Shown one piece after another: positions 1,432-63,384 of a stretch of DNA of 64,000 nt. The notes below the pieces were generated by a model, which was given only the letters and a program-made list of their open reading frames with translations, was not told where the DNA came from and searched no databases. Within the stretch, counting starts at the first letter, position 1, and each line of letters opens with the position of its first letter. The position numbers were made by a program, and so were the translations under genes. Location of the stretch: positions 186,001 to 250,000 of IMG/VR virus record IMGVR_UViG_3300023049_000005; one strand, 5' to 3'.

Positions 1432-1710
1432 ATGAATCTCTACCGAATCAAAAGAAAAAGCGATAATAAGTATTATAGGAACAGATCTAGGTTTACTAAA
1501 TACGGAACTTACTTTAGATTAGAACAATTACAGAAAAATCTACATTGGGTTCTAAAGAATTATGATAAAGCAGATTTAGAAATAAAAATTTATCATATAA
1601 AAGATGGTGGTGGATTAGAGTTATCTGATCAGACTGATAAAGATGATGTATTAAAGATGATTAATAGAGATAACTTTATAGAAGAAATATTAAGAAATGA
1701 TGAAACTTGA
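1432..1710 (+). CDS. Hypothetical protein with C-terminal RDxxIxxIL tag
   Basis: 92-aa ORF ending NRDNFIEEILRNDET; overlaps next gene. Confidence 0.75.
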   Translation: MNLYRIKRKSDNKYYRNRSRFTKYGTYFRLEQLQKNLHWVLKNYDKADLEIKIYHIKDGGGLELSDQTDKDDVLKMINRDNFIEEILRNDET

Positions 1711-2458
1711 AGTAGATTATTATAAAACACTAGGTTTAAGTTTTGACTTCACACCTAAAGACCTCAAAAAGAGTTATAGAGATTTATCTAAGTTATACCA
1801 TCCTGATAAGAATTCGGGAGAAGAGGCTTCAGGTAAGTTCAAAATAATAAACGAAGGATATAAGATGTTCTCTAATGAAGAATTAAGAGAACAATATGAT
1901 AATGAAAGTAAGTTCGGAAGAAGTTATGATCCTACATTAGAACTATTGAATTTCGAATTTTCTAATTCAAATGTAGCATCCACTAACGTAGTAGATAAGA
2001 TGAATGGGTTCAAGAAAACCGAAATGCTTCATATCATTTTAGAACTAGACGAATTCAAGCCTAATTTAACATATAAAAGAAATGTAATATGTTCTAATTG
2101 TGATGGAACAGGAAATGAGGACGTTAGAGGACTGAACTTAAATTCCTCATATAATGGAGAAAATATTAAACCTTTATTCGCTCATGATGAAGAAATCCCT
2201 TGTGATATATGTGAAAAAACGGGAAGTTATAATGGTATGGAATGTCCAGGTTGTAAAGGGAACGGATATATATCCTTAGGACTATCTAAGTGTAATAATT
2301 GTAACGGTAAGGGCGTAGTTGAAAAAATCAAAAGAGTAAAAGTAAAGGAAGATGATTTCGAGGGCGGTAAATTAAAGATGATTTATTTAGGCAATCAGTC
2401 AAAGTACAACGGTAAGATGGGAAACCTTTATGTAATAATTAAAGAAGACGAAGATTAA
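1697..2458 (+). CDS. dnaJ: DnaJ-like co-chaperone (J domain + CxxCxGxG zinc finger, shortened C-terminus)
   Basis: DYYKTLG...YHPDKN J domain; CSNCDGTG, CDICEKTG, CPGCKGNG, CNNCNGKG repeats; GNLYV C-terminal motif. Confidence 0.85.
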   Translation: MMKLEVDYYKTLGLSFDFTPKDLKKSYRDLSKLYHPDKNSGEEASGKFKIINEGYKMFSNEELREQYDNESKFGRSYDPTLELLNFEFSNSNVASTNVVDKMNGFKKTEMLHIILELDEFKPNLTYKRNVICSNCDGTGNEDVRGLNLNSSYNGENIKPLFAHDEEIPCDICEKTGSYNGMECPGCKGNGYISLGLSKCNNCNGKGVVEKIKRVKVKEDDFEGGKLKMIYLGNQSKYNGKMGNLYVIIKEDED

Positions 2459-2733
2459 TTTTCAAATATATCATCAAACTCCGTTGCTTTACTATAATCA
2501 ACTCTTTTCTCTTGTAAGAATTTTATGATATCATCATAATCCTTATGTTTTTCTATCTCACCAATTTTATTAAATAGATCTTCATTGATCTCAATAATAT
2601 CTTCTGTATTAGTATACCAATACATAGCTTCATATATCTCTTCGCCATAAAGCACGGAGAGGGATACCAAAATACCTGGACCGATTCGACCAATATATTC
2701 TTTAATCGATATGTCTAATTCACCTATCTTCAT
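2455..2733 (-). CDS. Hypothetical protein
   Basis: 92-aa ORF overlapping upstream gene on same strand. Confidence 0.65.
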   Translation of the reverse strand: MKIGELDISIKEYIGRIGPGILVSLSVLYGEEIYEAMYWYTNTEDIIEINEDLFNKIGEIEKHKDYDDIIKFLQEKRVDYSKATEFDDIFEN

Positions 2734-2971
2734 TTAGTATACTATCTATTTTTTTATCTCTTTTATATGCCTTTATATAGTATTGTCGTTCTTCGTTTGT
2801 CATATTCATAATAGTTTCAAAATTAGGTAGATCTAATATATCTGACATAAAATCAAAATATACCATAATACTTTCGATTGTATGACTATTCGTATATTGG
2901 ATATCACTTACATTCTTATTTCCTATTAATATATTCGAATTAGTTAGTATATCAGTATTCGTTATCTTCAT
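2720..2971 (-). CDS. Hypothetical protein with C-terminal RDxxIxxIL tag
   Basis: Ends KRDKKIDSILNEDR. Confidence 0.75.
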   Translation of the reverse strand: MKITNTDILTNSNILIGNKNVSDIQYTNSHTIESIMVYFDFMSDILDLPNFETIMNMTNEERQYYIKAYKRDKKIDSILNEDR

Positions 2972-3022
2972 ATTATTATCTTTTATCTTTTATATATATT
3001 ATAATGAAATAAGTTTACTACT

Positions 3023-3430
3023 ATGGATAAATCAACAAGATTAAAAATGACAATATTCTCAACTATAATACTAGCAATAGTAGGAGTTATAGCTTATATT
3101 TTTGACCCCGCACACATTGATAAATATGCCTTTTATAATATAAATACCGTTATACCTCTTTTAAGTTATATCGGAGGTAGAACAATAAGAAGCGGAAACC
3201 ATGAGGGTGGCTTTGTTGTTAACAGCACAAGATATAAAGTTGCATTATATACTTTCATAGGATCACTATTAATAGGAATAGGTTGTTATATCTTTTCTCC
3301 CGAAAATATCGATAAATTAGGCTCTTATATGATGGCGGTTGTGATAACAAGCGCAGGATTTATTATAGGAAGAAGTATTAAATCAGGTAATCCACAACAA
3401 GCCGATAGTAACAAGGTTATTGAACCTTAA
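3023..3430 (+). CDS. Four-TM membrane protein built from a tandem duplication, holin-like
   Basis: Two aligned halves STR...YIF.P..IDK.....[YF]I.GR[TS]I[RK]SGN, each with two hydrophobic helices. Confidence 0.55.
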   Translation: MDKSTRLKMTIFSTIILAIVGVIAYIFDPAHIDKYAFYNINTVIPLLSYIGGRTIRSGNHEGGFVVNSTRYKVALYTFIGSLLIGIGCYIFSPENIDKLGSYMMAVVITSAGFIIGRSIKSGNPQQADSNKVIEP

Positions 3431-3454
3431 TCAAAAAAAAAGAGTATAAGAAAT

Positions 3455-3886
3455 ATGAGCGTGAGTTTAGCGAATGGTGATTTGATAAAGATGGCTAAAG
3501 AGAATGAATTTGACCTAATTGGTCATTTCTGTGATTGTGAGAAGAGATGGGATAGTAGCCTTTCTGTTAATATAAAGGAAAAGTATCCTCTTAGTTATAA
3601 CGTAGATTCAGATAGTTTCCCTATGGATCTTGGGGAGTATTCTATATGTGATGATTATTTATTTAAGATTGCTAATATCTATTTGTTTTGCATAGATCAA
3701 AATATTAAAGAAACTGTATATAAAGCTTTGAATCAAGTGTGTTTTAATATTGACCGTAAATACAGTGGCAGTAAGGTTGGGTTTTCATATGACCAACTAA
3801 TAGAAATTGGGTTAGAGTGGGAACAATCCAAGAAAATATTTATTTCGAATTTCAAATCTGCACATTTAACGATTGTTAAAAATTAA
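3455..3886 (+). CDS. Macrodomain-like protein, apparently degenerate
   Basis: GDLIKMAKENEFDLIGHFCDC start typical of phage Appr-1-p macrodomains; glycine loops replaced. Confidence 0.6.
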   Translation: MSVSLANGDLIKMAKENEFDLIGHFCDCEKRWDSSLSVNIKEKYPLSYNVDSDSFPMDLGEYSICDDYLFKIANIYLFCIDQNIKETVYKALNQVCFNIDRKYSGSKVGFSYDQLIEIGLEWEQSKKIFISNFKSAHLTIVKN

Positions 3887-4086
3887 GCTTCTTTGATATA
3901 AATTAAACTATTTGATATTATGTTTTCCGAAATGACTACATAATCACCAACTTCATCATAAAAGTCCAATTTAGTAGCCTTAGGTATTTCTGCCACAACC
4001 TTCTCATATTCGGGTTTTTCTCCTTTGTATGTTTCTGATTTTATTTCACCGAGATCTTTATTCTTAACAACTATATAAAATTCCAT
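3883..4086 (-). CDS. Hypothetical protein
   Basis: 67-aa ORF with TAATATATA upstream (4107-4115, - strand). Confidence 0.6.
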   Translation of the reverse strand: MEFYIVVKNKDLGEIKSETYKGEKPEYEKVVAEIPKATKLDFYDEVGDYVVISENIISNSLIYIKEA

Positions 4087-4122
4087 ATTATTTGTTTATT
4101 TTTGTTTATATATTACAATATT

Positions 4123-4887
4123 ATGCTTTCGAAAAGAAATATATTTTTAATAATACTTTTATTGATGCTCAATAGTAATGCGTTTAACGTATTCTTAGGG
4201 GAATATAAGTTGAGTAAATTCCTAAAATACATAGACAAATTAGATAACTATGATACTTGTGATAGAATTGGGATAATCAATAGTATTGAATTGGGTGAGA
4301 ATATATTAAACAAAGAAGAATTATTTGATCGCATAAATAATGCAGATTACAAAATATACAAAGAGGGTATACCTAGGGAAAAGGACTATTCGGGTTTATT
4401 TATACATGACAGTGACACAGATAAAGATTATATCATACTTGATACTATGGAACTATCTCCTTTTACTATTTATCATGAAATAGGACATTTAGTAAATAAA
4501 CATAGGGAATCTGAAATAGATGTACTCATCTCTGATATAAAAAAGGATACTATTAATTATGCTGATTTTTCAAAACTATATTCAGATTTCCCTAGTATAT
4601 CAATTGGAGAAGATACACTTGCATTCGGTGATATAGTGCTTGCTGAATTTCTTAGTAACGAGGATTATTATTTATCGGATAGTGAGATATACGCAAGGCT
4701 TTTTTCTTATTATTATTTTTGCGAAATGTATGATATAAAGGATATCAAAGAACTAGGAGAAAAGTTACAATTCGTTAGTAAAGGAGATAGTGAAACTGTG
4801 ATATCTTACTTACGTGACTTAGATTTTTTATACATTTTACCCATTATCAATTTCGAAAAAGAAGAAAAAATAAAACTATTATTCTAA
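4123..4887 (+). CDS. Secreted/membrane-anchored zinc metallopeptidase-like protein
   Basis: Start reassigned to ATG 4123; hydrophobic N-terminus MLSKRNIFLIILLLML; HExxH (IYHEIGH) and downstream SEIYARL third-ligand motif. Confidence 0.6.
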   Translation: MLSKRNIFLIILLLMLNSNAFNVFLGEYKLSKFLKYIDKLDNYDTCDRIGIINSIELGENILNKEELFDRINNADYKIYKEGIPREKDYSGLFIHDSDTDKDYIILDTMELSPFTIYHEIGHLVNKHRESEIDVLISDIKKDTINYADFSKLYSDFPSISIGEDTLAFGDIVLAEFLSNEDYYLSDSEIYARLFSYYYFCEMYDIKDIKELGEKLQFVSKGDSETVISYLRDLDFLYILPIINFEKEEKIKLLF

Positions 4888-4956
4888 ATTTTAAAAACTC
4901 AACTGACGTTTTTTACTATATATAATAACCCCATATATAAAAATGAAAGTTGATAC

Positions 4957-5577: not shown

Positions 5578-5605
5578 CTTTATTAATTTATATTAAACCA
5601 TTTTT

Positions 5606-5631
5606 AAACATTTTTTAATCTTTTAATATAA
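5606..5631 (+). promoter_or_regulatory. Candidate phage middle-type promoter AAAC-N17-TATAA
   Basis: AAAC 5606-5609, 17 nt, TATAA 5627-5631 just before ATG 5637; same geometry recurs at 14734, 34426, 41640(-), 58340. Confidence 0.5.
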
Positions 5632-5636
5632 CTTCC

Positions 5637-6446: not shown

Positions 6447-6490
6447 TATTCTTTACTTAAATCGTATCTATATAAAATAATATATAAGAT

Positions 6491-6811: not shown

Positions 6812-6835
6812 AATAATTTTCCTTAATTTTACAAT

Positions 6836-7564
6836 ATGGGAACAAATAATTTTTCTATTGATTTGAAATTGTGGAATAGGTTTAAACAAATAGAACCTAC
6901 TTTCGAAAAAGGTGTATACTATAATAATGTACTTACTTGGGGCTTAAAAGGTTTCAGCAGCACTGAAATAGAAGATTTATCACATTATTTATTCATTCTA
7001 TCTAGGTTAACCACAGAAGAAGACTTAGAGAATAGTGGGTTAAATATCATCAGAACGTATTATTACTTATTTCACACTTCTTATTTCGATAAAGAAATAT
7101 TTAAAGGTGATGAATTTATTTCCCTTGGGTATAAAAGACCATTTGGTAATAGTTACATACAAGGTGATATAGCAGCATGTATAGATCCACAATATATGGA
7201 ATACTTGAAAGAACAGGGCATGGATATTACATATGACGATACAGAAGGAGGCGACCACTATTTAATAGAATCTCCATATCGAGAGGGTGATGAAATAAAA
7301 TATCTACAAATAGATAGTTCTAAATTAAACATAGACTTTATTATAAAAGAATATAACAAGGTGTTGATGGAGATTATACAAAAAGTTGACTTCAAATACC
7401 ATCAGTTTGAATCAACTGATTTACATACTTTTAAAAACCTCTCTAATAACGGAAAACTTTCAGATATTCAAGTTAATAATTCTGTTAATTTAGAATTTAC
7501 AGAAGTTATATTCCCATCTAGGGCATATTTAAGAGAAGAATTTATAGACAACGTTTTAAAATAA
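6836..7564 (+). CDS. Hypothetical protein with C-terminal R[DE]xxIxxVL tag
   Basis: Ends LREEFIDNVLK; YKRPFGNS motif. Confidence 0.75.
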   Translation: MGTNNFSIDLKLWNRFKQIEPTFEKGVYYNNVLTWGLKGFSSTEIEDLSHYLFILSRLTTEEDLENSGLNIIRTYYYLFHTSYFDKEIFKGDEFISLGYKRPFGNSYIQGDIAACIDPQYMEYLKEQGMDITYDDTEGGDHYLIESPYREGDEIKYLQIDSSKLNIDFIIKEYNKVLMEIIQKVDFKYHQFESTDLHTFKNLSNNGKLSDIQVNNSVNLEFTEVIFPSRAYLREEFIDNVLK

Positions 7565-7569
7565 ATGAC

Positions 7570-9069
7570 ATGAGAAAATCAACTTTATTGCTATTATCAT
7601 TTGTAGGAATCATATCCTTACTATTGATGATTAACTGTTTTAATACAACATCGGTTATATTTTTTATAATCAGTTGGGGTGTATTAATTTTAGCAGTATA
7701 TGAATCTACCCAAACGAAACACACTTTGAAACGAAATTTCCCACTATTAGCTAATTTAAGGTGGTTTTTTGAGGCTCAAAGGGATAAAATAGGTCAATAT
7801 TTCATCGAATCTGACACTAGTGGTAAACCATTCAATAAACAACAAAGGAGTATTGTTTACCAAAGATCTAAAAACCAACTAGAAACTGTTCCATTTGGAA
7901 CTATGTATGACGTATATGAAAGGGGACATCAGTTCGCAAAACATACTATGTTCCCTAAAGACTTTGAATTAAAAAGAATAAATGTAGGCAGTAAACACTG
8001 TAAAGCAAAATATGATAGTTCATTGGTTAATGTATCTGCTATGTCATATGGATCATTAAGTGGTGCTGCAGTAAGAGCATTAAATAAGGGTGCTAAGGAA
8101 GGTAACTTTGCTCAGAACACGGGAGAAGGTGGTATATCCCCACATCATCTACAAGGCGGTGATATCATTTTTCAGATAGGAACAGGATACTTTGGTGCAG
8201 GTAGGACAGAAAATGGTGTTAGGAAATTTGATACCAACAGTTTTGTAAAAAATGCAACTAGAAAAGAAGTGAAGATGATCGAGATAAAACTATCACAGGG
8301 CGCAAAACCTGGTCATGGTGGTATCCTTCCCGCAAAAAAGAACACAGAAGAGATATCGAAAATACGTGGGGTAGATCCACACACAACAGTTCATTCCCCT
8401 GCTCACCATTCAGCCTTTAGTAATTTTGAAGAAATGGTTGAGTTTATTCAGAAAGTAAGAGATCTGTCTAATGGTAAACCTGTTGGTATAAAGTTTTGTG
8501 TTACATCCCATTACGAAATAAAAGAGATGATCCGCACATTTAAAGAATTAGATAACTACCCTGATTTTATTACAATAGATGGTAGCGAAGGTGGGACGGG
8601 ATCAGCACCATTAGAGTATACTAATAACATGGGTACTCCTTTATTAGACGGTCTTAGTATTGTTAGGAAACAATTGGATATGAATTTAAACCTTAAAAAA
8701 GAAATTAAGGTATTCGCTAGTGGGAAAATAATCGATACCTTCGATATATTAAAAGTATTATCATTGGGTGCTGATGGGGTAAACATTGCTAGGGGATTTA
8801 TGTTGAGTTTGGGTTGTATCCAAGCAAGGGAGTGTAATAAAGACACTTGCCCCGTTGGTATAGCTACTCAGAATAAAGGCTTAGAAAGAGGGTTAGTAGT
8901 TGAAGAAAAATATAAAAGAGTTTTCAACTATCATAGAAATACCTTAGATAAATTTAAAGAAGTAGCGGGTTCTATTGGGGTGAGTAACATTGAAGATATA
9001 ACACCTGATTTAATCTATGAGCGAACAATAGATAGTAAATTAATTACATTTAATGAATTATATGGATAA
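7570..9069 (+). CDS. FMN-binding glutamate synthase family protein
   Basis: SAMSYGSLS, NTGEGG, QIGTGYFG, EIKLSQGAKPGHGG, DGSEGGTG, CIQARECNKDTCPVGIATQ (3Fe-4S) motifs; N-terminal TM segments. Confidence 0.92.
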   Translation: MRKSTLLLLSFVGIISLLLMINCFNTTSVIFFIISWGVLILAVYESTQTKHTLKRNFPLLANLRWFFEAQRDKIGQYFIESDTSGKPFNKQQRSIVYQRSKNQLETVPFGTMYDVYERGHQFAKHTMFPKDFELKRINVGSKHCKAKYDSSLVNVSAMSYGSLSGAAVRALNKGAKEGNFAQNTGEGGISPHHLQGGDIIFQIGTGYFGAGRTENGVRKFDTNSFVKNATRKEVKMIEIKLSQGAKPGHGGILPAKKNTEEISKIRGVDPHTTVHSPAHHSAFSNFEEMVEFIQKVRDLSNGKPVGIKFCVTSHYEIKEMIRTFKELDNYPDFITIDGSEGGTGSAPLEYTNNMGTPLLDGLSIVRKQLDMNLNLKKEIKVFASGKIIDTFDILKVLSLGADGVNIARGFMLSLGCIQARECNKDTCPVGIATQNKGLERGLVVEEKYKRVFNYHRNTLDKFKEVAGSIGVSNIEDITPDLIYERTIDSKLITFNELYG

Positions 9070-9313
9070 TTTAATTGGGAAAAAATTCATACCAAAGAAA
9101 ACTTTTTCGTTGGATAACACTATATTCTATAGTGATATATTGTATGAATTAGTAGATTACGAGGAAGGAGAGGTTTATAATCTATATTTCTTTAAAACCG
9201 AAACAGAGAAATGTATATTCGCAGAACAAAGACCTGATTGGTTTTTTGTGGATTACTTTTCGACAGTAGACCAAAACAGAGTAAAACTAATTAATACAAT
9301 ATTATACACATAA
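9053..9313 (+). CDS. Hypothetical protein with C-terminal tag variant
   Basis: Ends NRVKLINTILYT. Confidence 0.65.
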   Translation: MNYMDNLIGKKFIPKKTFSLDNTIFYSDILYELVDYEEGEVYNLYFFKTETEKCIFAEQRPDWFFVDYFSTVDQNRVKLINTILYT

Positions 9314-9331
9314 AAAATATACAAATGTGTT

Positions 9332-11456: not shown

Positions 11457-11460
11457 AAAT

Positions 11461-13462: not shown

Positions 13463-13471
13463 TCAAAAGAA

Positions 13472-15723: not shown

Positions 15724-16014
15724 ATGAATAACGATCTAATCACGGTAAGAAAAATTATAGATAATCTAGATGATTATAAAATTTACACTACCTATGAAGA
15801 TCTTGTAATCATAGAAATAGACGGTGTTACAATATACTATATATCTGTTAAAGATTTTAATATAAAGGATTTAACAGCTTCTATGGTTAAATGTGCTAGG
15901 GTATTAAAACAAAGGGGTATACAAGACAGGTATGTAAAATACAGAACCACTCTACTAAAGCTTTTTTTGCCATATAGAAGGGATGAAATAATTGATGATA
16001 TATTAGAAAATTAG
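15724..16014 (+). CDS. Hypothetical protein with C-terminal RDxxIxxIL tag
   Basis: Ends RRDEIIDDILEN. Confidence 0.75.
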   Translation: MNNDLITVRKIIDNLDDYKIYTTYEDLVIIEIDGVTIYYISVKDFNIKDLTASMVKCARVLKQRGIQDRYVKYRTTLLKLFLPYRRDEIIDDILEN

Positions 16015-17672: not shown

Positions 17673-17680
17673 ATATGTAT

Positions 17681-17689: not shown

Positions 17690-17727
17690 TTAGTATATTT
17701 GCTCATAGGTAAATAAAAATATAAGTT

Positions 17728-22291: not shown

Positions 22292-22957
22292 ATGAAGTTA
22301 ATATTAGAATTCACAGAATTTAATCACCAAAGAATGAATAGTGATTCTGTTCCACAATCAACACATGTAGATGATCCACAATTATCTCTTGGTTCATTTA
22401 ACAGATTTCAATCTAATCTTAAAAATGCAGTTAATAAATTAAACTCTATTTATAAGAAAATGAGTATTACTACATCAGGTGTTAATCTGACTAGTGGTAA
22501 ACCTATTGAACAAAATGATATTAAGAACATCAAGATTCTTAGAATATTCCCTAGTGATGATATTTACTATAATGTTTATTTCTCTTTCGAATTAGAAGAA
22601 AACGAATATTACGGAGTCATTAAAAAAATAAACCATGACCAACCTATATTATCATCTGAAATTTTTAAAGATGTGACAGTATTTGGATCTAAAGAATGGG
22701 TAATTAGAGTGAAGGGTAATTTGGTTAAGACTATAAAAAATTGGCTTAATGTAACTAAAGGAGAATATTTATCATTAAAAGAGATTGAGGTAATTGATAA
22801 ATTAACAGGTGAGTTAATACTACTTCCTGAGAAAAGTAAAATAGAAGTTCTTGGTACGTTTGACAGTGTGATTAATATTACACATGAAGATAGAGAATAT
22901 GATCTTAAAAATGGTAATTATTATTACTTCAATTATTACTTCGAGAATTTAAACTAA
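22292..22957 (+). CDS. Putative virion protein with CTS-like N-terminus
   Basis: MKLILEFTEFN; TAATATATA at 22279-22287. Confidence 0.65.
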   Translation: MKLILEFTEFNHQRMNSDSVPQSTHVDDPQLSLGSFNRFQSNLKNAVNKLNSIYKKMSITTSGVNLTSGKPIEQNDIKNIKILRIFPSDDIYYNVYFSFELEENEYYGVIKKINHDQPILSSEIFKDVTVFGSKEWVIRVKGNLVKTIKNWLNVTKGEYLSLKEIEVIDKLTGELILLPEKSKIEVLGTFDSVINITHEDREYDLKNGNYYYFNYYFENLN

Positions 22958-23155
22958 GGAATTTATAAGCTGATCTCTTTTTTCTATAAGAGTATGAAAG
23001 TGTTCTTTTTTGTAAACTTCGACTAAACCATTATCAGATACTATTAAGTACCCATTATCCATATTAGATAATACATCATACTTCTTACCGATGGTCAAAA
23101 ATGGATACTCATCATTAATACAGTATATAGGCTGTGTTCTTTCGTTCAAATACAT
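22949..23155 (-). CDS. Small SH3-like beta protein with C-terminal RD tag
   Basis: YCIN...LTIGKKYDV...YLIVSDNG; ends KRDQLINSLV. Confidence 0.7.
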   Translation of the reverse strand: MYLNERTQPIYCINDEYPFLTIGKKYDVLSNMDNGYLIVSDNGLVEVYKKEHFHTLIEKRDQLINSLV

Positions 23156-24319: not shown

Positions 24320-24589
24320 TTAATAGGAAGAAGAAGTGTCTTCGTCATATGAAGAATCTTCATAGTATTCATCAGTATAGCTAATCATCCCATCTTCGTT
24401 ATATTCTTCTACAGTACCCGTAAGAATTTTTTCAGGATCTAAATCAATTATATCAATTTTTTCACTTAATTCTTTTATATGTGTTGAAGCCCTTTCCTTA
24501 CTGATTGGATCATCTTCTCTTATATAGCTTTCTACTATATCGTTTAGCTCTTCCCAAGCCTCGTTTATGTTTTCTATCTTATTGCTCAT
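24320..24589 (-). CDS. Hypothetical acidic protein
   Basis: 89 aa with Y/S/E/D-rich tail. Confidence 0.65.
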   Translation of the reverse strand: MSNKIENINEAWEELNDIVESYIREDDPISKERASTHIKELSEKIDIIDLDPEKILTGTVEEYNEDGMISYTDEYYEDSSYDEDTSSSY

Positions 24590-24809
24590 CTTCTAAAATT
24601 TGATTGATTTTAATATCTCTTATTTCTGCTTTGTTTATGAACCTATTCACATTATAATAATGTGGTTCACCATAATCATCTTCTACTTTAATTGTATTAG
24701 TAGATTCACCTACGTCTAGACAATCGTATTCCTTTAACTTAGTTAAGTATACGTTTGCCCATATCACACAAATAACTTTACTTCCTTTCTCTATTTTACT
24801 TCCTAGCAT
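24579..24809 (-). CDS. Small SH3-like beta protein with C-terminal RD tag
   Basis: KVICV...YLTKLKEYD...IKVEDDYG...NRF; ends IRDIKINQILEDEQ; similar to 22949..23155. Confidence 0.75.
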   Translation of the reverse strand: MLGSKIEKGSKVICVIWANVYLTKLKEYDCLDVGESTNTIKVEDDYGEPHYYNVNRFINKAEIRDIKINQILEDEQ

Positions 24810-27389: not shown

Positions 27390-28060
27390 TGGAAAAAGTA
27401 TTATATCATTTCATACCCGTATTTAATTTAATCTCTCTTTTAGAAGAATATAAGAGCTTGAGTAAAATATTTTTGAAATCTAATTCAGAACACATTAGCT
27501 TAACTAGGAATCCTTCTTTAACTAGTGTGGATCTTTCTTTCGATAAACATATGTGTAGGATCACATTGGATACTAAGAAGATTTATGATAGGTATAAGAT
27601 AAAACCATACGCAGATTCAACTTATACACAAGGTAGTGATGAAGAACAAGAAGAAAGAGTATATGTAAAAAAGAGGTCTAATTGGCAAAGAAACTATGAT
27701 AAGGCATTACAAATACCCACAGGCGCATATAAAATAGATATATCTGATTGTATATTACGAATAGATATTTTAACAATGGTTCATAATAAAGTGAAAGACA
27801 GACAAGCAGGATATAACTCTTGGATGTTTTCATACGATCAATTTAATCCTAAGTATTTAGATCCCAAAAATAAAAAGAATTTACCTACAATACAAAAAGA
27901 CCACGAAGGTTTAGTTCATGGTCTTTTTAATATTTTAAAACAAGTTGATTTACCGTTTAAGGTAAAACTCGTCACAAAATTTGTCGGGTATAAATATCAG
28001 GATAAATATATCGATAAATGGAATAGAAGAAGTTTTTCTTTTAATTCTTTCGGTTCATAA
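27389..28060 (+). CDS. ADP-ribosyltransferase-fold-like protein
   Basis: LYHF, ISLTRN, RITLD..KI..RYKIKP, EEQEERV (H-S-E pattern). Confidence 0.5.
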   Translation: MEKVLYHFIPVFNLISLLEEYKSLSKIFLKSNSEHISLTRNPSLTSVDLSFDKHMCRITLDTKKIYDRYKIKPYADSTYTQGSDEEQEERVYVKKRSNWQRNYDKALQIPTGAYKIDISDCILRIDILTMVHNKVKDRQAGYNSWMFSYDQFNPKYLDPKNKKNLPTIQKDHEGLVHGLFNILKQVDLPFKVKLVTKFVGYKYQDKYIDKWNRRSFSFNSFGS

Positions 28061-29168
28061 ATCCCATTCGGTTATTATTTTCTTCTTCCTCCAATTTATC
28101 ATTATAGATTTGCGCTAAAGTCATATCTTCGGTAGTTTCTTCTTTCCCAAGTTTATTTAATATTTTATTAGCTTTATCCGTTTTAAGTTTACCGAATTCG
28201 TATTTCTTTAATAGTCTTCCTTCTCGAAGGAGAGCTTTATCTAAGTTATGTACATCAGTGTTAAAAGTACATATTATTTGAAATCTTAAACAATCCCCTA
28301 ATATACCATCAGATAAATTAAGTAGATCACTCACTGCAGCACCATTTCCTGAATTTCTCGATTCTACTAATTTCTCCGCATCCTCAATCATTAATACTGA
28401 GTTGGGATAGTCCATTAAGAAGTTTAACATAGAAGGCTCTGATAAAGAAGTCCCAATATTAGGTGGTATGAATATAACACGTTTATTAACTGTTCTGATA
28501 AGGTGTCTTAAATAAGTAGTTTTTCCTGTGCCTGGATCACCGTGGAATAAGAAAAGACCTACGCTTTCTCCTTTGATTTTTTCTATTACGTCATTATGCA
28601 CATCGATAAAACCATCGTTGTAATTACTCTCTAAATCTAAATTTGCATATTTATCATCGATCCTAAAATCAGATAAACTCATATCCTTACCTTGTGTAAG
28701 CATATGGACAGAAGTGTTAATTCTGTTTTTAGATCCGTCATTTATTATATTTTTAAGTTTATCTAAAACAATATGGTCTATTTCACCTTTACTAAGGAAC
28801 TGCAGATTTTCGTAATTAGATATACTCAACACAATATTTCTTTTCTGATCAACAGATATTCTATTTATTCTATCCTCTCTTTCGTTTACCAATTCCCCTG
28901 TATAATCATCTATTGTGTTCTCAGGAGTAAATGATTCCGAACAGTAATTTACATCAAATTCAAATTCTTTCTCTATTAGTTCTCTTACTTCCTTTCGAAC
29001 CGATTTATGTATAGAATAGAAATTATAACTATAATTAGCTAGATCCTTGAAAAATTTTAAATAAATTAAACGAACCTCAGATGAATCTTGGTATTCTGAA
29101 ATTTCTACATCAGTAATATTACCTATGGTTATATCGTTTCCTTTTATTTTGCTTGTCTTCATTTCCAT
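28041..29168 (-). CDS. AAA+ ATPase (single module)
   Basis: Walker A GDPGTGKT, Walker B LMIEDAE, LLNLSDG, TFN..LDKALLREGRL second region of homology, C-terminal MGF. Confidence 0.88.
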   Translation of the reverse strand: MEMKTSKIKGNDITIGNITDVEISEYQDSSEVRLIYLKFFKDLANYSYNFYSIHKSVRKEVRELIEKEFEFDVNYCSESFTPENTIDDYTGELVNEREDRINRISVDQKRNIVLSISNYENLQFLSKGEIDHIVLDKLKNIINDGSKNRINTSVHMLTQGKDMSLSDFRIDDKYANLDLESNYNDGFIDVHNDVIEKIKGESVGLFLFHGDPGTGKTTYLRHLIRTVNKRVIFIPPNIGTSLSEPSMLNFLMDYPNSVLMIEDAEKLVESRNSGNGAAVSDLLNLSDGILGDCLRFQIICTFNTDVHNLDKALLREGRLLKKYEFGKLKTDKANKILNKLGKEETTEDMTLAQIYNDKLEEEENNNRMGFMNRKN

Positions 29169-32801: not shown

Positions 32802-33080
32802 ATGAAAAAATTATTACTAATATTCTCAACTCTACTGTGTGTCAGTGCTTATTCACAAGTAGATGGTAAATACGGATCGGAAGGACTTTCCTTTCACACT
32901 CCCCAAAAAGATACCTTGTTTTTACAGAAAGGTCATTTAATTACACCCGATATCATTAGGATATGGGAAACCGATAGTACTATTGAAGAAACTAAGCCTG
33001 TTATCATTACCCATACTAACATCGCTTATATTAGAGAACAAAGATTAAAACAATATGGAATTAGAAAAGAAATTCGATGA
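32802..33080 (+). CDS. Small secreted protein
   Basis: Sec signal MKKLLLIFSTLLCVSAYS/Q. Confidence 0.65.
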   Translation: MKKLLLIFSTLLCVSAYSQVDGKYGSEGLSFHTPQKDTLFLQKGHLITPDIIRIWETDSTIEETKPVIITHTNIAYIREQRLKQYGIRKEIR

Positions 33081-36428: not shown

Positions 36429-36851
36429 TTAATCCAAAAACATATCAATTTTCATGTCTCGATAATCGACTTTATGTTTGTCTAATGTGTTTACTATTCT
36501 ATAGTGTGCGTCTTCACTATTTGTTACAGTGAAGATATAGTGAAGATATTCAACAAACCCCATTTTCTTTTGTAACGGAAATATCTCACCACCACCTAAA
36601 TTATAGACTATGTCAGTATTCTCACCATCCATCAGGACTTTTATGGATGTCGTATAACTCGTTATAATATCGTATTTGAGATCTTTGTCAAAACTCGTCC
36701 ATATAGGGAAGTCATATTTAGCGAGTTTATTATACTGTTTTATTGTCTTTCTTTTCTCTTTTTCTAAAAAAGATTCATACCAACCCAAATTCCCAATCTT
36801 CTTTTTTTGTTGGTGTTTATAAGCTATATGTGTGTCTGATCCTTTTTTCAT
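36429..36851 (-). CDS. Hypothetical protein with C-terminal RD tag
   Basis: Ends YRDMKIDMFLD; host-type promoter upstream. Confidence 0.75.
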   Translation of the reverse strand: MKKGSDTHIAYKHQQKKKIGNLGWYESFLEKEKRKTIKQYNKLAKYDFPIWTSFDKDLKYDIITSYTTSIKVLMDGENTDIVYNLGGGEIFPLQKKMGFVEYLHYIFTVTNSEDAHYRIVNTLDKHKVDYRDMKIDMFLD

Positions 36852-37329: not shown

Positions 37330-37911
37330 ATGGAAGATACTACTAATAATGAAGTTATTGATATGGAGATTAGGTATATGCACGATGAATACCTATCTTC
37401 ACGTGAAAAGCTTATAGAAAGAAGAAAAGAAGCAGTTCAAAAAGTTATTTCAAAAAAAGAATATACATATAGAATAGAGGGGATTAATTATTATTATATG
37501 TTAGAATCGGGTGTCACACTGATTGTTAGAGCAAATGATAGTGATATATCACATAGTCTCAATACGGATAGAATATTACTTAAAGAAGAGAAGAGAGATA
37601 TGTTTATCTCCTCTCTTCTAGAAGATGTTGATTCATTCACCGATAGTTTGATGAAAGACCTAAAAGAAATTGAATGGATGTATAATGAATTTCGTATGCT
37701 TAAAAATAATCTATATGAGGCTATTATAACCGAATTAAGAGATTGGGTAGATAATACCTTTGATATATCATACTTACTTCCATTGGTTATTTCTATCGGG
37801 GAAACAAAGTATATTATTACCGAAAACGAAGACCGTGGAGATGCTGCTTATAACCCTAGTGAAAATAAAACCAAAATTGATCTGAAACCATACATAGAGT
37901 ATTCACTATGA
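37330..37911 (+). CDS. Hypothetical protein with internal RD tag; paralog of next gene
   Basis: Internal KRDMFISSLLED; VISIGETKYII matches VINLGSIKYLL in 37908..38432. Confidence 0.7.
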   Translation: MEDTTNNEVIDMEIRYMHDEYLSSREKLIERRKEAVQKVISKKEYTYRIEGINYYYMLESGVTLIVRANDSDISHSLNTDRILLKEEKRDMFISSLLEDVDSFTDSLMKDLKEIEWMYNEFRMLKNNLYEAIITELRDWVDNTFDISYLLPLVISIGETKYIITENEDRGDAAYNPSENKTKIDLKPYIEYSL

Positions 37912-43488: not shown

Positions 43489-43794
43489 TTAATTCAATTT
43501 AGTTATTTCACCGTGGTTATCGTAAATGAATTTATACTTTTCTGCAATTGAATAAGAACAAGTATAATTAGTGTACACCTTATCTTCCTTTACTGCTTTT
43601 TGGATATCTTCTAAAGACGCTTGACCAAATTCATCAGAACTACCATAAAAAGTGAATGTTTTATCTTCTAATTTAAACCAACCACCACCCTGTACTTTAT
43701 CTTTCTCAGTAACTAATTCATTATGATAGATACATCTTGAAAGGATTAAATTTCCTTCTTCTATAATAAATTTGGGGTTTAATTCTTCTATCAT
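43489..43794 (-). CDS. Hypothetical protein
   Basis: PKFIIE, YH.EL, GGGWF, FYGSS.EFG. Confidence 0.7.
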   Translation of the reverse strand: MIEELNPKFIIEEGNLILSRCIYHNELVTEKDKVQGGGWFKLEDKTFTFYGSSDEFGQASLEDIQKAVKEDKVYTNYTCSYSIAEKYKFIYDNHGEITKLN

Positions 43795-44069
43795 ACACCT
43801 AAATCTTCTATGAATTCATCACGACTCATCGCTTTTTTATAGGTATCGTATCCTGGAATTAAGGGAAAGTCTACATAGGTATAAACCTCTTTATACTTTG
43901 TTCCAAAGAAGTCATATATACGTATTCTACGCAAATCAACCTTTCCTTTTTTCATAGCAAAAAGAATTTTCAATACCTTATCATATGACTTCACATGATG
44001 TTTCTCTTGATGTTCTTTACCATCTTTGTCTTTGTAGATAAATACTGCGTCAAAAAATTTAGTTTCCAT
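43791..44069 (-). CDS. Hypothetical protein with C-terminal RD tag
   Basis: Ends SRDEFIEDLGV; TATATTTG at 44089-44096(-). Confidence 0.75.
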   Translation of the reverse strand: METKFFDAVFIYKDKDGKEHQEKHHVKSYDKVLKILFAMKKGKVDLRRIRIYDFFGTKYKEVYTYVDFPLIPGYDTYKKAMSRDEFIEDLGV

Positions 44070-58370: not shown

Positions 58371-58757
58371 ATGATATTATTTAATGAAGAATACGACTTA
58401 GAAAAAAAGAAGTCATTAATAAAAGAACATAACCAAAGGTATTATAATGCAGTTTATATAGACATACCTGATTATGTTATAAGTAAAATATTCTTTTTAA
58501 CTAATACTATAAATATCAATAATAAGGGTGTAGATAACGTAACTATGTATTCTATATCAGAATTAACAGAGGAATTTTTAAAAGATAAGATCATTTTTTT
58601 CAATAAATTAACACTTGAGCCATTTAATTATCATATAAATAATGATCCTGTTGTATTACATGGTAATATTTATAATAGAAGTCAATATATGGATTTACCC
58701 ATTTATCAAAAATATTTAGTAGAGAAGAGAGAACTTTATATTAAAGATTGTCTTTAA
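58371..58757 (+). CDS. Hypothetical protein with C-terminal tag variant
   Basis: Ends KRELYIKDCL; AAAC-N17-TATAAT at 58340-58366. Confidence 0.65.
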   Translation: MILFNEEYDLEKKKSLIKEHNQRYYNAVYIDIPDYVISKIFFLTNTININNKGVDNVTMYSISELTEEFLKDKIIFFNKLTLEPFNYHINNDPVVLHGNIYNRSQYMDLPIYQKYLVEKRELYIKDCL

Positions 58758-61464: not shown

Positions 61465-61505
61465 TAATTTATATATAAATTAATGTTTAGTTTGTCTGAT
61501 AAACA

Positions 61506-62288
61506 TTAAATAAAAACCATATTCCCGTTCTTATAATGAACAAATTCTTTACCTAACATCTCAGCCCATTCTTCCTTAGTGGCAGTCTGTTTTCCAAAGA
61601 CTGTTGTGTTATCTGCACACCACTCACATAGGTCTTCTAAATTATCAAACACAGGGGATTTAGGAGAACCCTCACTTGTTGTTTCCCATAATTGAAATCC
61701 TTCACCCTTTGGTGGATCAGTTGATTCCCATTCTTCGTATAAGTTTTTAGATTCTTCACTATCCCATACTACACCTTCACCATCACAAATTTCACATAGT
61801 CCATATACTCCAATGTCCTTAGCTCTCGCCTTCACACAAATATGCATATTAATACCATCATGTCCCATTCCTTCTCTGTTCCATTTATTTACTTCATCAG
61901 GCGTAGGTATATATCCATTGTTATAAGGAAGCCAACTGTTACCACCGTTTTTTACCTTTTCTTCTACCTCTTTCTTTTGTTCCTCATTTAAAGGAACTCT
62001 TGTGAAGTCCATTAACCTACCTGATTCTAATAGAGCATTAATTTCAACTTCCGTGATATTATTAGAATGTGCTAATTTATTATACCTTCTACCATTACCA
62101 AGATATTCCCAATCTTGTTCATCGAATGAATACCATTCTTCTGATATCTTTTTAGTTTCTTTATTATATCCCGATTGGTCACAAGATATACAATCCACGG
62201 CTGTATATAGTGGATTTAAATATCCTTTCCATTTTTTACCTAATTCCCAATCGAAATCCATTGGTACTCTTTTTAATTCTCTACCCAT
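61506..62288 (-). CDS. Hypothetical phage protein with split CxxC zinc finger
   Basis: Start reassigned to MGRELKRVP (ATG 62288); CISCDQSG, CEICDGEG, GEGFQLWETTSEGSP.SPVF. Confidence 0.7.
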   Translation of the reverse strand: MGRELKRVPMDFDWELGKKWKGYLNPLYTAVDCISCDQSGYNKETKKISEEWYSFDEQDWEYLGNGRRYNKLAHSNNITEVEINALLESGRLMDFTRVPLNEEQKKEVEEKVKNGGNSWLPYNNGYIPTPDEVNKWNREGMGHDGINMHICVKARAKDIGVYGLCEICDGEGVVWDSEESKNLYEEWESTDPPKGEGFQLWETTSEGSPKSPVFDNLEDLCEWCADNTTVFGKQTATKEEWAEMLGKEFVHYKNGNMVFI

Positions 62289-62289
62289 T

Positions 62290-62739
62290 TTAGTTGTGTT
62301 TAATATCTCTTTCTGCTTGTCGATCAATGTCTTTACTTTTAATAGAATCTTTCTTATCATATAATTTCTTACCCTTACCAACCCCAATTTCTAATTTAGC
62401 CCAATTGTTAACGATCAGTAATTTAATAGGAATTAATGAATATCCTTTTTCTTCTATTTTTTTAGTTATCTTCTTAATCTCTTGTTTAGTAAGTAATAGT
62501 TTCCTCTCTCTTGTTTCATCGTGTTTTTCACCAAACTTATACTCTTTGATATACATATTCTTAACATATATTTCCCCGTCATTAATTATACAGAAAGACT
62601 CTTTGATAGAGCATGATCCTTCCCTAACACTTTTTATTTCAGTACCTAATATTCTAAGACCTGCAACAAAAGTTTCCCCTATCTCATAATTGAAATAAGC
62701 TTTCTTATTGTTTACTATTGTTTCTATTTTCTTTGACAT
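62290..62739 (-). CDS. smpB: SsrA-binding protein SmpB
   Basis: NKKAYFNYEI, AGL.I.GTEIKSVR, RERKLLL.KQEI, LIPIK, AKLEIGVGKGKKLYDKK; start reassigned to ATG 62739. Confidence 0.93.
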   Translation of the reverse strand: MSKKIETIVNNKKAYFNYEIGETFVAGLRILGTEIKSVREGSCSIKESFCIINDGEIYVKNMYIKEYKFGEKHDETRERKLLLTKQEIKKITKKIEEKGYSLIPIKLLIVNNWAKLEIGVGKGKKLYDKKDSIKSKDIDRQAERDIKHN

Positions 62740-62749
62740 ATTAATATAG

Positions 62750-63070
62750 TTAAATGCTATCAATAAGTTTATCTCTGAGTTCAGCTTTAATTAAGTTTAC
62801 TATTTTTTCTTTATTTCTTCTATATAAGTAAACAGTAATAGTTTCTAATTTGAAATCATTCAGATCTAATTTTTCTAAATCTAATATGATATAACGCAAA
62901 AATCCATCAGGTGATACTCTCCTTTCATGATAAGCATTACCCTTTAATAAAGATCTATCTTGATATAATAATTTCTTCATTAGTTTTTCATTACCAATAG
63001 AATTACCTTCCTTGTCTTTTAATATACTAGGATTATTTAGTAAATCTCTTATTACTATAAAGTCGCTCAT
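62750..63070 (-). CDS. Hypothetical protein with C-terminal RD tag; paralog of next gene
   Basis: FIVIRDLLNNPSILK...; ends ELRDKLIDSI. Confidence 0.75.
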   Translation of the reverse strand: MSDFIVIRDLLNNPSILKDKEGNSIGNEKLMKKLLYQDRSLLKGNAYHERRVSPDGFLRYIILDLEKLDLNDFKLETITVYLYRRNKEKIVNLIKAELRDKLIDSI

Positions 63071-63384
63071 AAGCTATCAATAAAAGAATCCCTCAATTCA
63101 ATAGTAACCATCTTCTTTATTTCTTCATTGTCTATAAAGATATAATCAATTATATCAATATCAGACATCATAATAAATTTTTGATTTAAATCGATAACTA
63201 AGTATTTATTTATATAATATTCAATAATTTGACCATGTTTTATAACATCATCAATACCGAAATGAGTTCCGCTATCATATTGAATTAATCTCTTTATAAA
63301 ATCAATATTACCCCTATTCTCATTGTTTTTATACTTAACAATAGTTGGGTTATTATATATATCCTTAATCAGAATAAAATTCAT
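63067..63384 (-). CDS. Hypothetical protein with C-terminal RD tag
   Basis: FILIKDIYNNPTIVK...; ends ELRDSFIDSL; TATCTTTG at 63389-63396(-). Confidence 0.75.
   Translation of the reverse strand: MNFILIKDIYNNPTIVKYKNNENRGNIDFIKRLIQYDSGTHFGIDDVIKHGQIIEYYINKYLVIDLNQKFIMMSDIDIIDYIFIDNEEIKKMVTIELRDSFIDSL

What the first reader, a model, noticed from the sequence alone, without database searches (positions are those of the whole stretch)
1432..63384. Dispersed C-terminal 'RDxxIDxIL' peptide tag on at least 12 mostly unrelated small proteins: candidate undescribed docking/targeting system
Seen directly: twelve ORFs scattered over both strands end in the same amphipathic helix. They are NRDNFIEEIL (1432), KRDKKIDSIL (2720), LREEFIDNVL (6836), NRVKLINTIL (9053), RRDEIIDDIL (15724), KRDQLINSLV (22949), IRDIKINQIL (24579), YRDMKIDMFL (36429), SRDEFIEDLG (43791), KRELYIKDCL (58371), LRDKLIDSI (62750) and LRDSFIDSL (63067). 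Internal copies KRDMFISSLL and VRDMKLSLL sit in 37330 and 37908. Consensus R-[DE]-x-x-[IL]-[DNES]-x-[ILV]-L, within 0-5 residues of the stop. The N-terminal bodies are unrelated apart from two paralog pairs. None of the recognised enzymes or CTS-bearing late proteins carries it. Several sit behind host-type TAnnTTTG (36851, 44069, 63384) or AAAC-N17-TATAA (58371) motifs. Inference: a modular address label letting many early accessory proteins dock on one hub, such as a phage or host scaffold, an AAA+ unfoldase/degron reader (e.g. 28041..29168), or a hetero-oligomerisation helix. I know of no functional description of it.
Basis: partly seen in the sequence, partly recalled or inferred. Interest (0 to 1): 0.88.

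Follow-up and report, generated by a model that had tools for sequence, protein, structure and literature searches.

The report
Shared C-terminal tag in huge phages
About one in seven genes of this large Bacteroidota-type phage, and hundreds of otherwise unrelated small proteins in its huge-phage relatives, end in the same short helix (R-D-x-K/hydrophobic-I-D/N-x-I-L), which behaves like an undescribed address label whose reader is still unknown.

Summary
A scoring matrix trained only on a different genome finds 12 tagged gene ends in the window against 0.1 expected. It rejects 9053 and the internal copy in 37908, and it adds 32802-33080. Codon usage shows that selection acts on the peptide, not on the DNA. 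The window is part of a 271-kb IMG/VR contig related to the 635-735 kb 'Mahaphage' genomes. In LR745206.1, 163 of 945 called genes (17%) carry the tag on bodies with no detectable similarity to each other. Dozens of other large viral contigs are tag-rich, and cellular genomes are not. Orthologues keep the tag while their bodies diverge. Genomes have their own tag 'dialects'. The motif also occurs at N-termini and between domains. The only bodies of recognisable origin are fragments of the major head protein. Best reading: a portable docking helix read in trans by one conserved partner, with the prohead/capsid as leading but unproven destination. The AAA+ protein proposed as hub is not supported. 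No matching family or paper was found.

The parts
1432..1710 (+). 92-aa ORFan ending ...NRDNFIEEILRNDET. Tag peptide at 1663-1692. Its last codons overlap the start of the DnaJ-like gene 1697-2458.
   Evidence: 10.1 bits
2720..2971 (-). 83-aa protein ending ...KAYKRDKKIDSILNEDR. Tag at 2764-2735. It overlaps the next gene, 2455-2733. It is a positional counterpart of a conserved tagged gene in LR745206.1 (292789-293016).
   Evidence: (26.7 bits)
6836..7564 (+). 242-aa protein with the core GYKRPFGNSY, ending ...LREEFIDNVLK. Tag at 7529-7558.
   Evidence: 19.7 bits. 12 of 13 full-length homologues at 29-48% identity also end in the tag.
15724..16014 (+). 96-aa ORFan ending ...YRRDEIIDDILEN. Tag at 15976-16005.
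   Evidence: 22.7 bits. The orthologue in L081 keeps the tag.
22949..23155 (-). 68-aa protein with a DUF6501-like small barrel body, ending ...EKRDQLINSLV. Tag at 22981-22952.
   Evidence: 15.3 bits. The Pfam profile ends before the tag. Orthologues in L081 and LR745206.1 keep a tag.
24579..24809 (-). 76-aa protein ending ...AEIRDIKINQILEDEQ. Tag at 24623-24594.
   Evidence: 29.5 bits. The PHROG 4927 profile ends where the tag begins.
32802..33080 (+). 92-aa protein ending ...AYIREQRLKQYGIRKEIR. Tag at about 33030-33059. It is the '...GI' variant of the tag.
   Evidence: 15.0 bits. The orthologue in L081 ends ...IREQRFKQYGIREEVR.
36429..36851 (-). 140-aa ORFan ending ...DYRDMKIDMFLD. Tag at 36464-36435.
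   Evidence: 8.6 bits; no homologues beyond itself
43791..44069 (-). 92-aa ORFan ending ...MSRDEFIEDLGV. Tag at 43826-43797.
   Evidence: 10.1 bits
62750..63070 (-). 106-aa protein ending ...AELRDKLIDSI. Tag at 62779-62753. Paralogue of 63067-63384.
   Evidence: (18.6 bits). A low-confidence AlphaFold model puts the tag in a helix spanning residues 84-105.
63067..63384 (-). 105-aa protein ending ...IELRDSFIDSL. Tag at 63096-63070. A third paralogue lies just outside the window (L086:6876-7277, ending ...ELRDCLIDKLI).
   Evidence: (13.1 bits)
37330..37911 (+). 193-aa protein with an internal copy, ...EEKRDMFISSLLEDV, at 37591-37620, followed by about 95 more residues.
   Evidence: 14.9 bits. 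About 30 comparable internal or N-terminal copies occur in LR745206.1.
58371..58757 (+). Doubtful member: 128-aa protein ending ...KRELYIKDCL. Its end is shaped by a perfect 18-bp hairpin at 58730-58768, shared with the convergent gene 58741-59280, which ends ...ELYIKDNL.
   Evidence: (8.6 bits)
9053..9313 (+).
   Evidence: 1.1 bits, within the background

Best explanation
The motif is a portable, self-contained short helix. Its consensus is K-[S/Q]-x-x-R-[D/E]-x-[K or hydrophobic]-[I/L]-[N/D/K]-x-[I/L/V]-[L or G-I], usually 0-2 residues from the stop. It has been attached to, and then stably kept on, very many unrelated small cytoplasmic phage proteins. It is most likely read in trans by one conserved partner, so it would work as an address label or docking peptide. 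Shown: it exists, it is selected at the protein level, it is portable, it is conserved beyond the bodies that carry it, it is specific to a virus clade, and it is very abundant. Inferred: that a single reader binds the face formed by R0, K3, I4, I7 and L8. Leading guess for the destination, which is inference only: the prohead or capsid. On that guess the tag would load a large and fast-changing set of small proteins into the very large head, or onto it. That would be comparable in logic to encapsulin cargo-loading peptides or the T4 capsid-targeting sequence. Head-protein-derived carriers of the motif might serve as anchors.
For: The enrichment is real. The window has 12 tagged tails against 0.1 expected. 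LR745206.1 has 163 of 945 genes against about 3 expected.

Selection is on the protein. Codon choice at tag positions equals genome usage, and same-residue codon identity between tags is 0.58 against 0.545 expected, or 0.49 against 0.52 in the window.

The bodies are unrelated. The best BLASTP E-value among 111 bodies is 0.014. Only 4/111 match Pfam and 10/111 match PHROGs, each a different family. Profiles for DUF6501 and PHROG 4927 end where the tag starts.

The tag is portable. About 30 copies are N-terminal or internal and are followed by a G/N/D cap.

The tag is constrained. In distant orthologue pairs it is 59% identical against 38% for the body (p = 1e-4). 12 of 13 homologues of 6836 keep it at 29-48% identity. 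A tagged protein has an untagged homologue in a sister lineage.

The tag shifts in concert within genomes. A hydrophobic residue at +3 occurs in 8/12 window tags against 24/162 (p = 2e-4). The '...LGI' ending occurs in 11/18 tags of L129 against 26/162 (p = 8e-5).

Conserved polar residues (R, D, K, N) on a helix attached to unrelated bodies are hard to explain by packing in cis.

The tag is specific to viruses. 29 of 52 IMG/VR pattern hits are tag-rich loci, against 1 of 120 in cellular genomes.

The capsid link rests on two clade-wide families derived from the gp23-type major head protein. One is the N-terminal 110 residues with an inserted RD helix. The other is the C-terminal half with a C-terminal RD tag that is kept down to 27% identity. 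The next gene after the latter is a conserved 72-74-aa tagged protein.
Against: No reader has been identified, and no binding, localisation or virion data exist. The two AlphaFold models were too poor (pLDDT 57 and 48) to show whether the helix is free or packed on its body. Hidden ancient paralogy of all carriers cannot be excluded, and it could also produce the genome dialects.

Against the capsid guess in particular: only a few of about 190 carrier families are head-derived. Many tagged genes sit in arrays of small genes that look like early or accessory regions. Expression timing is unknown. Seventeen per cent of all genes is a lot for packaged cargo.
Confidence: 0.55

Rival explanations
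1. Degron or adaptor tether. The helix binds an unfoldase or protease, either host ClpX/ClpA/Lon/FtsH or a phage AAA+ protein. In one version, tagged accessory proteins are cleared on schedule. In the other, they act as exchangeable substrate receptors that deliver host targets to one degradation machine, which is the logic of SspB's ClpX-binding tail or of poxvirus ANK-PRANC families.
For: The carriers are small, fast-evolving and mostly ORFans, as expected of arms-race proteins. The position is terminal. The phage encodes proteostasis genes: DnaJ-like, FKBP, AAA, M28-like peptidase and SmpB. A conserved docking helix joined to variable bodies fits an adaptor family.
Against: The window's AAA protein has no conserved N-domain, and its ATPase domain is shared with unrelated jumbo phages. 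The DnaJ-like gene also occurs in Lak and LR756501 genomes, whose sampled regions showed no tag. The last residues are variable and 0-11 residues may follow the motif, unlike free-carboxylate degrons. This reading does not explain the head-protein-derived carriers.
Confidence: 0.15
2. Homotypic zipper. RD helices pair with each other, so tagged proteins form mixed oligomers, and the two head-protein fragments (N-piece and C-half) are rejoined or anchored through their RD helices.
For: Both complementary fragments of a head-protein paralogue carry the motif. Some proteins carry two copies. Tagged genes are clustered, with 59 adjacent pairs against 28 expected.
Against: The conserved part is only about 9-13 residues, or 1.5 heptads. 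It has an Arg on its hydrophobic stripe and a low hydrophobic moment. That is weak for a stable coiled coil. Indiscriminate pairing among 160 proteins would seem harmful.
Confidence: 0.1
3. Cis structural element of one hugely diverged superfamily. All carriers descend from one small protein whose C-terminal helix is the only part still recognisable, and the helix simply completes the fold.
For: Within families the tag is inherited vertically. Up to 10% of bodies share an SH3-like G-K-x-Y-x-V signature. No long flexible linker precedes the helix.
Against: Carriers range from 41 to 731 residues. Their bodies include a zinc-ribbon-like body, Cse60-like, HTH-like and head-protein-derived bodies. 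No position upstream of -4 is conserved. The motif also occurs at N-termini and between domains. Invariant R and conserved D/K/N are not what generic packing requires.
Confidence: 0.1
4. Sliding-clamp (PIP-box / T4 gp45-type) binding peptide that tethers the proteins to phage DNA.
For: The spacing D1-I4-I7-L8 equals the PIP-box spacing Q1-h4-a7-a8 (consensus from memory). T4-type clamp clients carry hydrophobic-acidic C-terminal tails. The phage has a T4-like replication module.
Against: The tag has no Gln and no aromatic pair. The polymerase's own conserved tail (...KRLSVLVDIFANL) is not among the 26 best-scoring window tails. That tail is equally conserved in L003, which lacks the tag. More than 100 clamp clients would be implausible.
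Confidence: 0.05
5. A DNA or RNA element at gene ends (coupling signal, promoter or recombination cassette) that only incidentally encodes a peptide.
For: Tagged genes overlap the next gene more often: 61% against 38% in LR745206.1, and 6/7 against 1/11 in the window.
Against: Synonymous codons are used at genome frequencies, and tags are no more alike in DNA than their residues require. Many tags lie at convergent gene ends or inside proteins.
Confidence: 0.02

Closest known systems
Encapsulin cargo-loading peptides and bacterial-microcompartment encapsulation peptides
   Same: A short terminal peptide, usually C-terminal and often helical, on unrelated proteins addresses them to one protein shell. 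Encapsulin shells share the HK97 fold with phage heads. Here the motif is also carried by head-protein-derived proteins.
   Different: There is no sequence resemblance. No shell binding has been shown. The scale is far larger (17% of genes). The carriers are tiny ORFans rather than enzymes.
T4 capsid-targeting sequence (N-terminal, about 10 residues, on internal proteins and Alt)
   Same: It is a phage-encoded address peptide shared by unrelated proteins in a T4-like phage, and the proteins it targets are injected accessory proteins.
   Different: The T4 signal is N-terminal and is cleaved by the prohead protease. The RD motif is mostly C-terminal. An h-x-E cleavage-type site precedes it in only 15/163 cases.
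SspB C-terminal ClpX-binding tail; ESCRT-III MIM helices binding the MIT domain of Vps4
   Same: Very short C-terminal peptides or helices dock many small proteins on the N-domain of an AAA+ machine.
   Different: The consensus sequences (recalled from memory) do not match. No conserved AAA+ N-domain accompanies the tag.
Poxvirus and giant-virus multigene families with a shared C-terminal hub-docking module (ANK-PRANC/F-box)
   Same: A large fraction of the viral genes combines variable, fast-evolving bodies with one conserved C-terminal docking element.
   Different: Those modules are about 30-50 residues long, the bodies are repeats of one kind, and the hub (a cullin ligase) is eukaryotic.
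PIP-box / T4 gp45 clamp-binding tails
   Same: C-terminal position and the i, i+3, i+6, i+7 spacing of key residues.
   Different: The key residue types differ, and the polymerase tail does not score as a tag.

Membership tests
PIP-box / T4-type sliding-clamp-binding peptide | Consensus Q-x-x-[ILM]-x-x-[FY]-[FY], or the hydrophobic-acidic aromatic tail of T4 clamp clients (consensus from memory) | tested here: not met
   The logo of 111 tags has D/E rather than Q, I/L rather than an aromatic pair, and an invariant R and frequent K not required by PIP.
PIP-box / T4-type sliding-clamp-binding peptide | The phage's own polymerase C-terminal tail belongs to the same motif class | tested here: not met
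   The polymerase 38475-39908 ends ...KRLSVLVDIFANL. It is absent from the 26 best window tails, so it scores below -7.9 bits. The same tail is conserved in tag-free L003.
ESCRT-III MIM / MIT-domain AAA ATPase docking | An AAA ATPase with a conserved N-terminal reader domain co-occurring with the motif | tested here: not met
   Only residues about 160-370 of 28041-29168 have relatives. The N-domain has no Pfam match and no counterpart in LR745206.1 or GenBank phages. The fold of the N-domain was not modelled.
ssrA / SspB-type C-terminal degron or ClpX tether | Fixed extreme C-terminal residues read together with the free carboxylate | tested here: not met
   0 to 11 variable residues follow the motif, and the motif also occurs internally and at N-termini.
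Capsid / shell cargo-loading peptide (encapsulin CLP, T4 CTS) | A short terminal peptide shared by otherwise unrelated cargo proteins | tested here: met
   163 carriers with no mutual BLASTP similarity.
Capsid / shell cargo-loading peptide (encapsulin CLP, T4 CTS) | Sequence consensus of the known signals | tested here: not met
   The RD logo bears no resemblance to either signal as recalled from memory. A profile search of PDB sequences gave only chance hits.
Capsid / shell cargo-loading peptide (encapsulin CLP, T4 CTS) | Physical association of carriers with the shell or virion | not testable with these tools
   Only indirect evidence exists: two clade-wide families derived from the gp23-type head protein carry the motif.
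Type IX secretion C-terminal domain (Por_Secre_tail) | A C-terminal beta-sandwich domain of about 75 residues matching PF18962 | tested here: not met
Among the window proteins scanned against Pfam, only 57476-58210 matches PF18962. 62750, 63067 and the newly added 32802 were not in that scan. In any case the tag is only 9-13 residues long.
Protein-kinase catalytic loop (H-R-D-L-K-x-x-N-I-L) | The motif embedded in a kinase domain | tested here: not met
   The resemblance is at chance level (E about 0.5). The carriers have no kinase domain.

The most novel reading that the evidence does not exclude
Huge Bacteroidota phages of the Mahaphage group have a proteome-scale cargo-loading system. The RD helix is a capsid (prohead) address. 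It loads more than a hundred different, rapidly evolving small effector proteins into the giant head. These would be delivered with the DNA as a pre-made host-takeover or anti-defence arsenal. Head-protein-derived RD proteins would act as the anchors, and sister lineages would use other tags (for example ...KYNL).
Probability: 0.25. Interest if true: 0.95.

Novelty: categorically new. Interest (0 to 1): 0.88.

Why it matters
Huge phages are full of small genes that nobody can annotate. A single 9-13-residue label shared by about 17% of the genes of a 635-kb phage, and by up to half the genes in some loci, puts hundreds of these orphans into one functional class. It also gives a direct experimental handle: one peptide, one presumed reader. 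It could also yield a compact tag for directing proteins to that machine. The logic of an address label is familiar. However, no known signal, reader or pathway matches this one, and neither the founding huge-phage paper nor two generic full-text searches mention it.

Tried and rejected
DNA-level explanation: rejected by codon analyses.

tmRNA idea (a phage SmpB, with the tag added by trans-translation): no tmRNA was found in the window or in LR745206.1, and the tags are encoded in frame.

AAA+ 28041-29168, the DnaJ-like protein 1697-2458 and the conserved 133-aa protein 35977-36378 as readers: their distribution among phages does not follow the tag.

Clamp-binding: the polymerase tail does not score as a tag.

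T4-type late promoter TATAAATA: at chance level and not upstream of tagged genes.

Cleavage-site idea (h-x-E before the tag): present in only 15/163 cases.

Structure prediction of two carriers: pLDDT 57 and 48, so uninformative about packing, and fold searches were therefore not run.

Profile search of PDB sequences with the tag: only chance matches to kinase catalytic loops.

Homologue searches for 24579 and 36429: only near-identical sequences. tblastn of 24579 and 22949 against GenBank phages: nothing.

Looking for a cultured tag-positive phage: Flavobacterium phage MaF61 (50-100 kb region) has none. Lak-C1, LR756500 and LR756501 samples also have none.

PDB sequence search of the LR745206.1 head protein found nothing. 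Its identity rests on annotated tblastn hits and a PHROG match.

Literature searches found no description.

Full report
**Check of the observation.** The twelve terminal ones end 0-5 residues before the stop.

I called 81 genes with a simple non-overlapping ORF rule. The pattern R[DE]xx[IL][DNES]x[ILVF] occurs in the last 16 residues of 10 of them. It occurs at only 4 of roughly 19,000 internal positions, and residue shuffling gives 0.06 tail hits.

That pattern was derived from the same data, so I repeated the test with a position matrix built only from another genome, LR745206.1. Twelve window genes score at least 8 bits in their tails, and the next best scores 2.0. Shuffled proteins give a mean of 0.1 and a maximum of 2, and reversed sequences give none.

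The 58371 case has another cause. A perfect 18-bp hairpin at 58730-58768 spans the overlapping ends of two convergent genes and makes both end in ELYIKD[C/N]L.

**Protein or nucleic acid?** At the tag positions the window uses AGA, AGG, CGT and CGA for Arg and several codons for Ile and Leu. In LR745206.1 the codon frequencies at each tag position equal the genome-wide ones. Pairs of tags that share a residue share the codon no more often than codon usage predicts: 0.58 against 0.545, and 0.49 against 0.52 in the window. The conserved object is therefore the peptide.

Tagged genes do overlap the next gene more often. This explains the variable few residues after the motif, because they hold the next start codon. 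It does not explain the motif itself.

**Where the window comes from.** The polymerase gene matches IMGVR_UViG_3300023049_000005, a 270,756-bp contig, at 100%. Near-identical and roughly 77-89% identical relatives exist in ENA and Logan assemblies, and they keep the tags.

The window has T4-like replication and baseplate genes, many sugar- and methyl-transferases, and a protein with a type IX secretion sorting domain. It also has a set of proteostasis genes: DnaJ-like, FKBP, AAA, M28-like peptidase and SmpB.

The nearest GenBank polymerases belong to the 635-735 kb 'uncultured phage' genomes LR745206, LR756502, LR756504 and LR756501, followed by Lak phages. These are the Mahaphage clade, predicted to infect Bacteroidetes (PMC7162821).

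**The tag is a clade-wide, proteome-scale feature.** I fetched all of LR745206.1. Of 945 called genes, 111 match the simple pattern near the C-terminus, against 1.8 in shuffles. With the matrix, 163 genes (17%) score at least 8 bits, against about 3 expected from the internal rate.

- **The carriers.** The median length is 110 residues. They have no membrane segments and an ordinary isoelectric point. They are clustered, with 59 adjacent pairs against 28 expected.
- **The bodies.** With the tag removed, no two of 111 bodies are similar by BLASTP (best E-value 0.014). Only 4 match Pfam and 10 match PHROGs, each a different family.
- **The logo.** It reads K(-4), S/Q(-3), R (invariant in the 111 pattern-selected tags, where R is imposed by the pattern), D/E, x, K (69%), I/L, N/K/D, x, I/L/V, then L or the variant G-I. 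Mostly one or two residues follow before the stop.
- **Other positions.** About thirty further copies lie near N-termini or between domains, followed by a G/N/D cap.

LR756502 also has the tag. Samples of LR756501, LR756500, Lak-C1 and Flavobacterium phage MaF61 do not.

A DNA pattern for the commonest codons found 52 places in IMG/VR. Of these, 42 lie within 20 codons of an in-frame stop, and 29 loci hold two or more tags. Some loci reach 19 of 40 genes, on contigs of 17-476 kb with 21-35% G+C. The same pattern in 120 places of bacterial and archaeal genomes gave one tag-rich locus, a 4-kb phage-like MAG contig. Many of the viral loci share genes with LR745206.1 and the window, so this is one broad phage group.

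**Evidence that it is a functional module.**

- **Retention in orthologues.** Orthologue pairs between LR745206.1, LR756502 and the window keep the tag. Tag identity is 59% against 38% for the bodies (p = 1e-4).
- **Retention in a whole family.** An exhaustive search with the 242-residue carrier 6836 found a family with the core GYKRPFGNSY. In it, 12 of 13 full-length members at 29-48% identity end in a tag.
- **Presence and absence.** A tagged LR745206.1 protein has a 35%-identical untagged homologue in the sister contig L003. The Pfam and PHROG profiles that match two window carriers stop where the tag begins.
- **Genome dialects.** The window phage prefers a hydrophobic residue at +3, in 8/12 tags against 24/162. 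L129 prefers the ...LGI ending, in 11/18 against 26/162. These counts use non-paralogous carriers only.
- **Helix geometry.** On a helix, R0, K3, I4, I7 and L8, with D1 and N5 beside them, cover about 200 degrees. Only positions 2, 6 and 9 are free to vary, and the hydrophobic moment is low. That is what a helix held in a partner's groove would look like, rather than a generic amphipathic cap.

**What it might dock to.** Only its ATPase domain has relatives, and these occur in unrelated jumbo phages too. Its N-domain matches nothing. The DnaJ-like protein and a well-conserved 133-residue protein also occur in genomes whose sampled regions showed no tag.

The only carriers whose bodies have a recognisable origin are derived from the gp23-type major head protein of these phages. 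That protein is LR745206.1 200752-202434. It was identified by annotated tblastn hits and a PHROG 138 match. Two families are involved:

- **N-terminal piece (128-165 residues).** It is the first 110 or so residues of the head protein, with a 45-residue insertion holding the motif...ENRDRKIDSI....
- **C-terminal half (about 245 residues).** It corresponds to head-protein residues 340-530 or so, with a C-terminal ...QRDIKIDNILDG.... This family is found on at least two dozen large contigs, and it keeps the tag down to 27% identity.

The gene after the C-terminal-half family is a conserved 72-74-residue carrier. This is why I rank the prohead or capsid first as a destination. It remains an inference from a few families. 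Timing data are lacking, and the two structure predictions were too poor to use.

**Comparison with known systems.** The logic is that of terminal address peptides: encapsulin cargo-loading peptides, microcompartment encapsulation peptides, the T4 capsid-targeting sequence, SspB's ClpX tail, ESCRT-III MIM helices, PIP boxes, and the C-terminal PRANC module of poxvirus gene families. None of their defining sequence features is met (see the membership table). A profile search of all PDB sequences returned only chance matches to the kinase catalytic loop. No Pfam model covers the tag. I found no paper describing it.

**Verdict.** The finding is real and larger than reported, and to my knowledge it is undescribed. 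What is shown is a portable, protein-level, strongly selected terminal helix. It is carried by hundreds of unrelated small proteins in a clade of huge phages. What is inferred is a single trans-acting reader, with the capsid as my leading guess at roughly one chance in four. The rivals are a degradation-machine tether, a homotypic zipper, and a cis structural remnant of one ancient family.

Noticed in passing
L003 (IMGVR_UViG_3300024262_000020), genes at 95-460, 460-1011, 1011-1772, 2702-3343, 17141-17470 and 17470-17967: This sister lineage has a polymerase 40% identical to the window's. It has no RD tag in the 21 kb fetched. Instead, six BLASTP-unrelated proteins end in KYN[L/M/I] at the very C-terminus, and most begin MKxLKxFE, which resembles the T4 capsid-targeting sequence as I recall it. 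This may be a different terminal label playing the same role.
   Followed up: partly
window 58730-58768: A perfect 18-bp hairpin (-22.8 kcal/mol, z = -5.6) lies across the overlapping ends of convergent genes 58371-58757 (+) and 58741-59280 (-). It acts as a terminator-like element in both directions, and it forces both proteins to end in ELYIKD[C/N]L.
   Followed up: yes
LR745206.1 291407-291880 (L094:41407-41880); L119:5372-5830; L109:12119-12871: This is a family of mini-proteins equal to the N-terminal 110 or so residues of the gp23-type major head protein. They carry a 45-residue insertion holding the RD motif and a conserved ...hE[D/E]HPDY... stretch, and they end in a basic tail. One member has two copies of the insertion.
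   Followed up: partly
LR745206.1 207176-207907 (L093:7176-7907); L117:170-910; L289-L312: This is a 'half head protein' family: the C-terminal half of the major head protein plus a C-terminal RD tag. It is conserved on many contigs of up to 483 kb. It is followed by a conserved 72-74-residue tagged gene.
   Followed up: partly
window 62290-62763 (-), 1697-2458 (+), 14781-15233 (+), 28041-29168 (-), 29249-30184 (+): The phage encodes SmpB, a DnaJ-like protein with a zinc-finger region, an FKBP-type isomerase, a classic-clade AAA ATPase and an M28-like peptidase. ARAGORN found no tmRNA in the window or in LR745206.1, so the partner of the phage SmpB is unclear.
   Followed up: partly
window 6836-7564 and homologues P0004-P0019: This protein family of about 225-250 residues has an invariant-looking core, GYKRPFGNSY(V/I)xGD. 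It has no Pfam or PHROG match, and almost all members carry the tag.
   Followed up: partly
window tagged genes 1432, 2720, 24579, 43791, 63067 and others: The few residues after the tag are mostly the overlap with the next gene's start codon. Tagged genes overlap their downstream neighbour far more often than untagged small genes do: 6/7 against 1/11 in the window, and 61% against 38% in LR745206.1.
   Followed up: yes
L129 (IMGVR_UViG_3300010365_001539), 2945-13628: This array has 19 of 40 small genes carrying the tag, mostly in the ...R[D/E]xKLNxLGI form. Several bodies share an SH3-like signature (xCIKx...LTIGKxYEV), similar to window 22949 and the Pfam family DUF6501.
   Followed up: partly
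window 57476-58210 (-): This phage protein has a type IX secretion C-terminal sorting domain (PF18962, E = 1e-13). That is consistent with a Bacteroidota host.
   Followed up: no
tag consensus against the PDB: The tag resembles the protein-kinase catalytic loop (Y/H-R-D-L-K-x-x-N-I-L) closely enough that this was the top PDB hit, but the match is at chance level (E about 0.5).
   Followed up: yes
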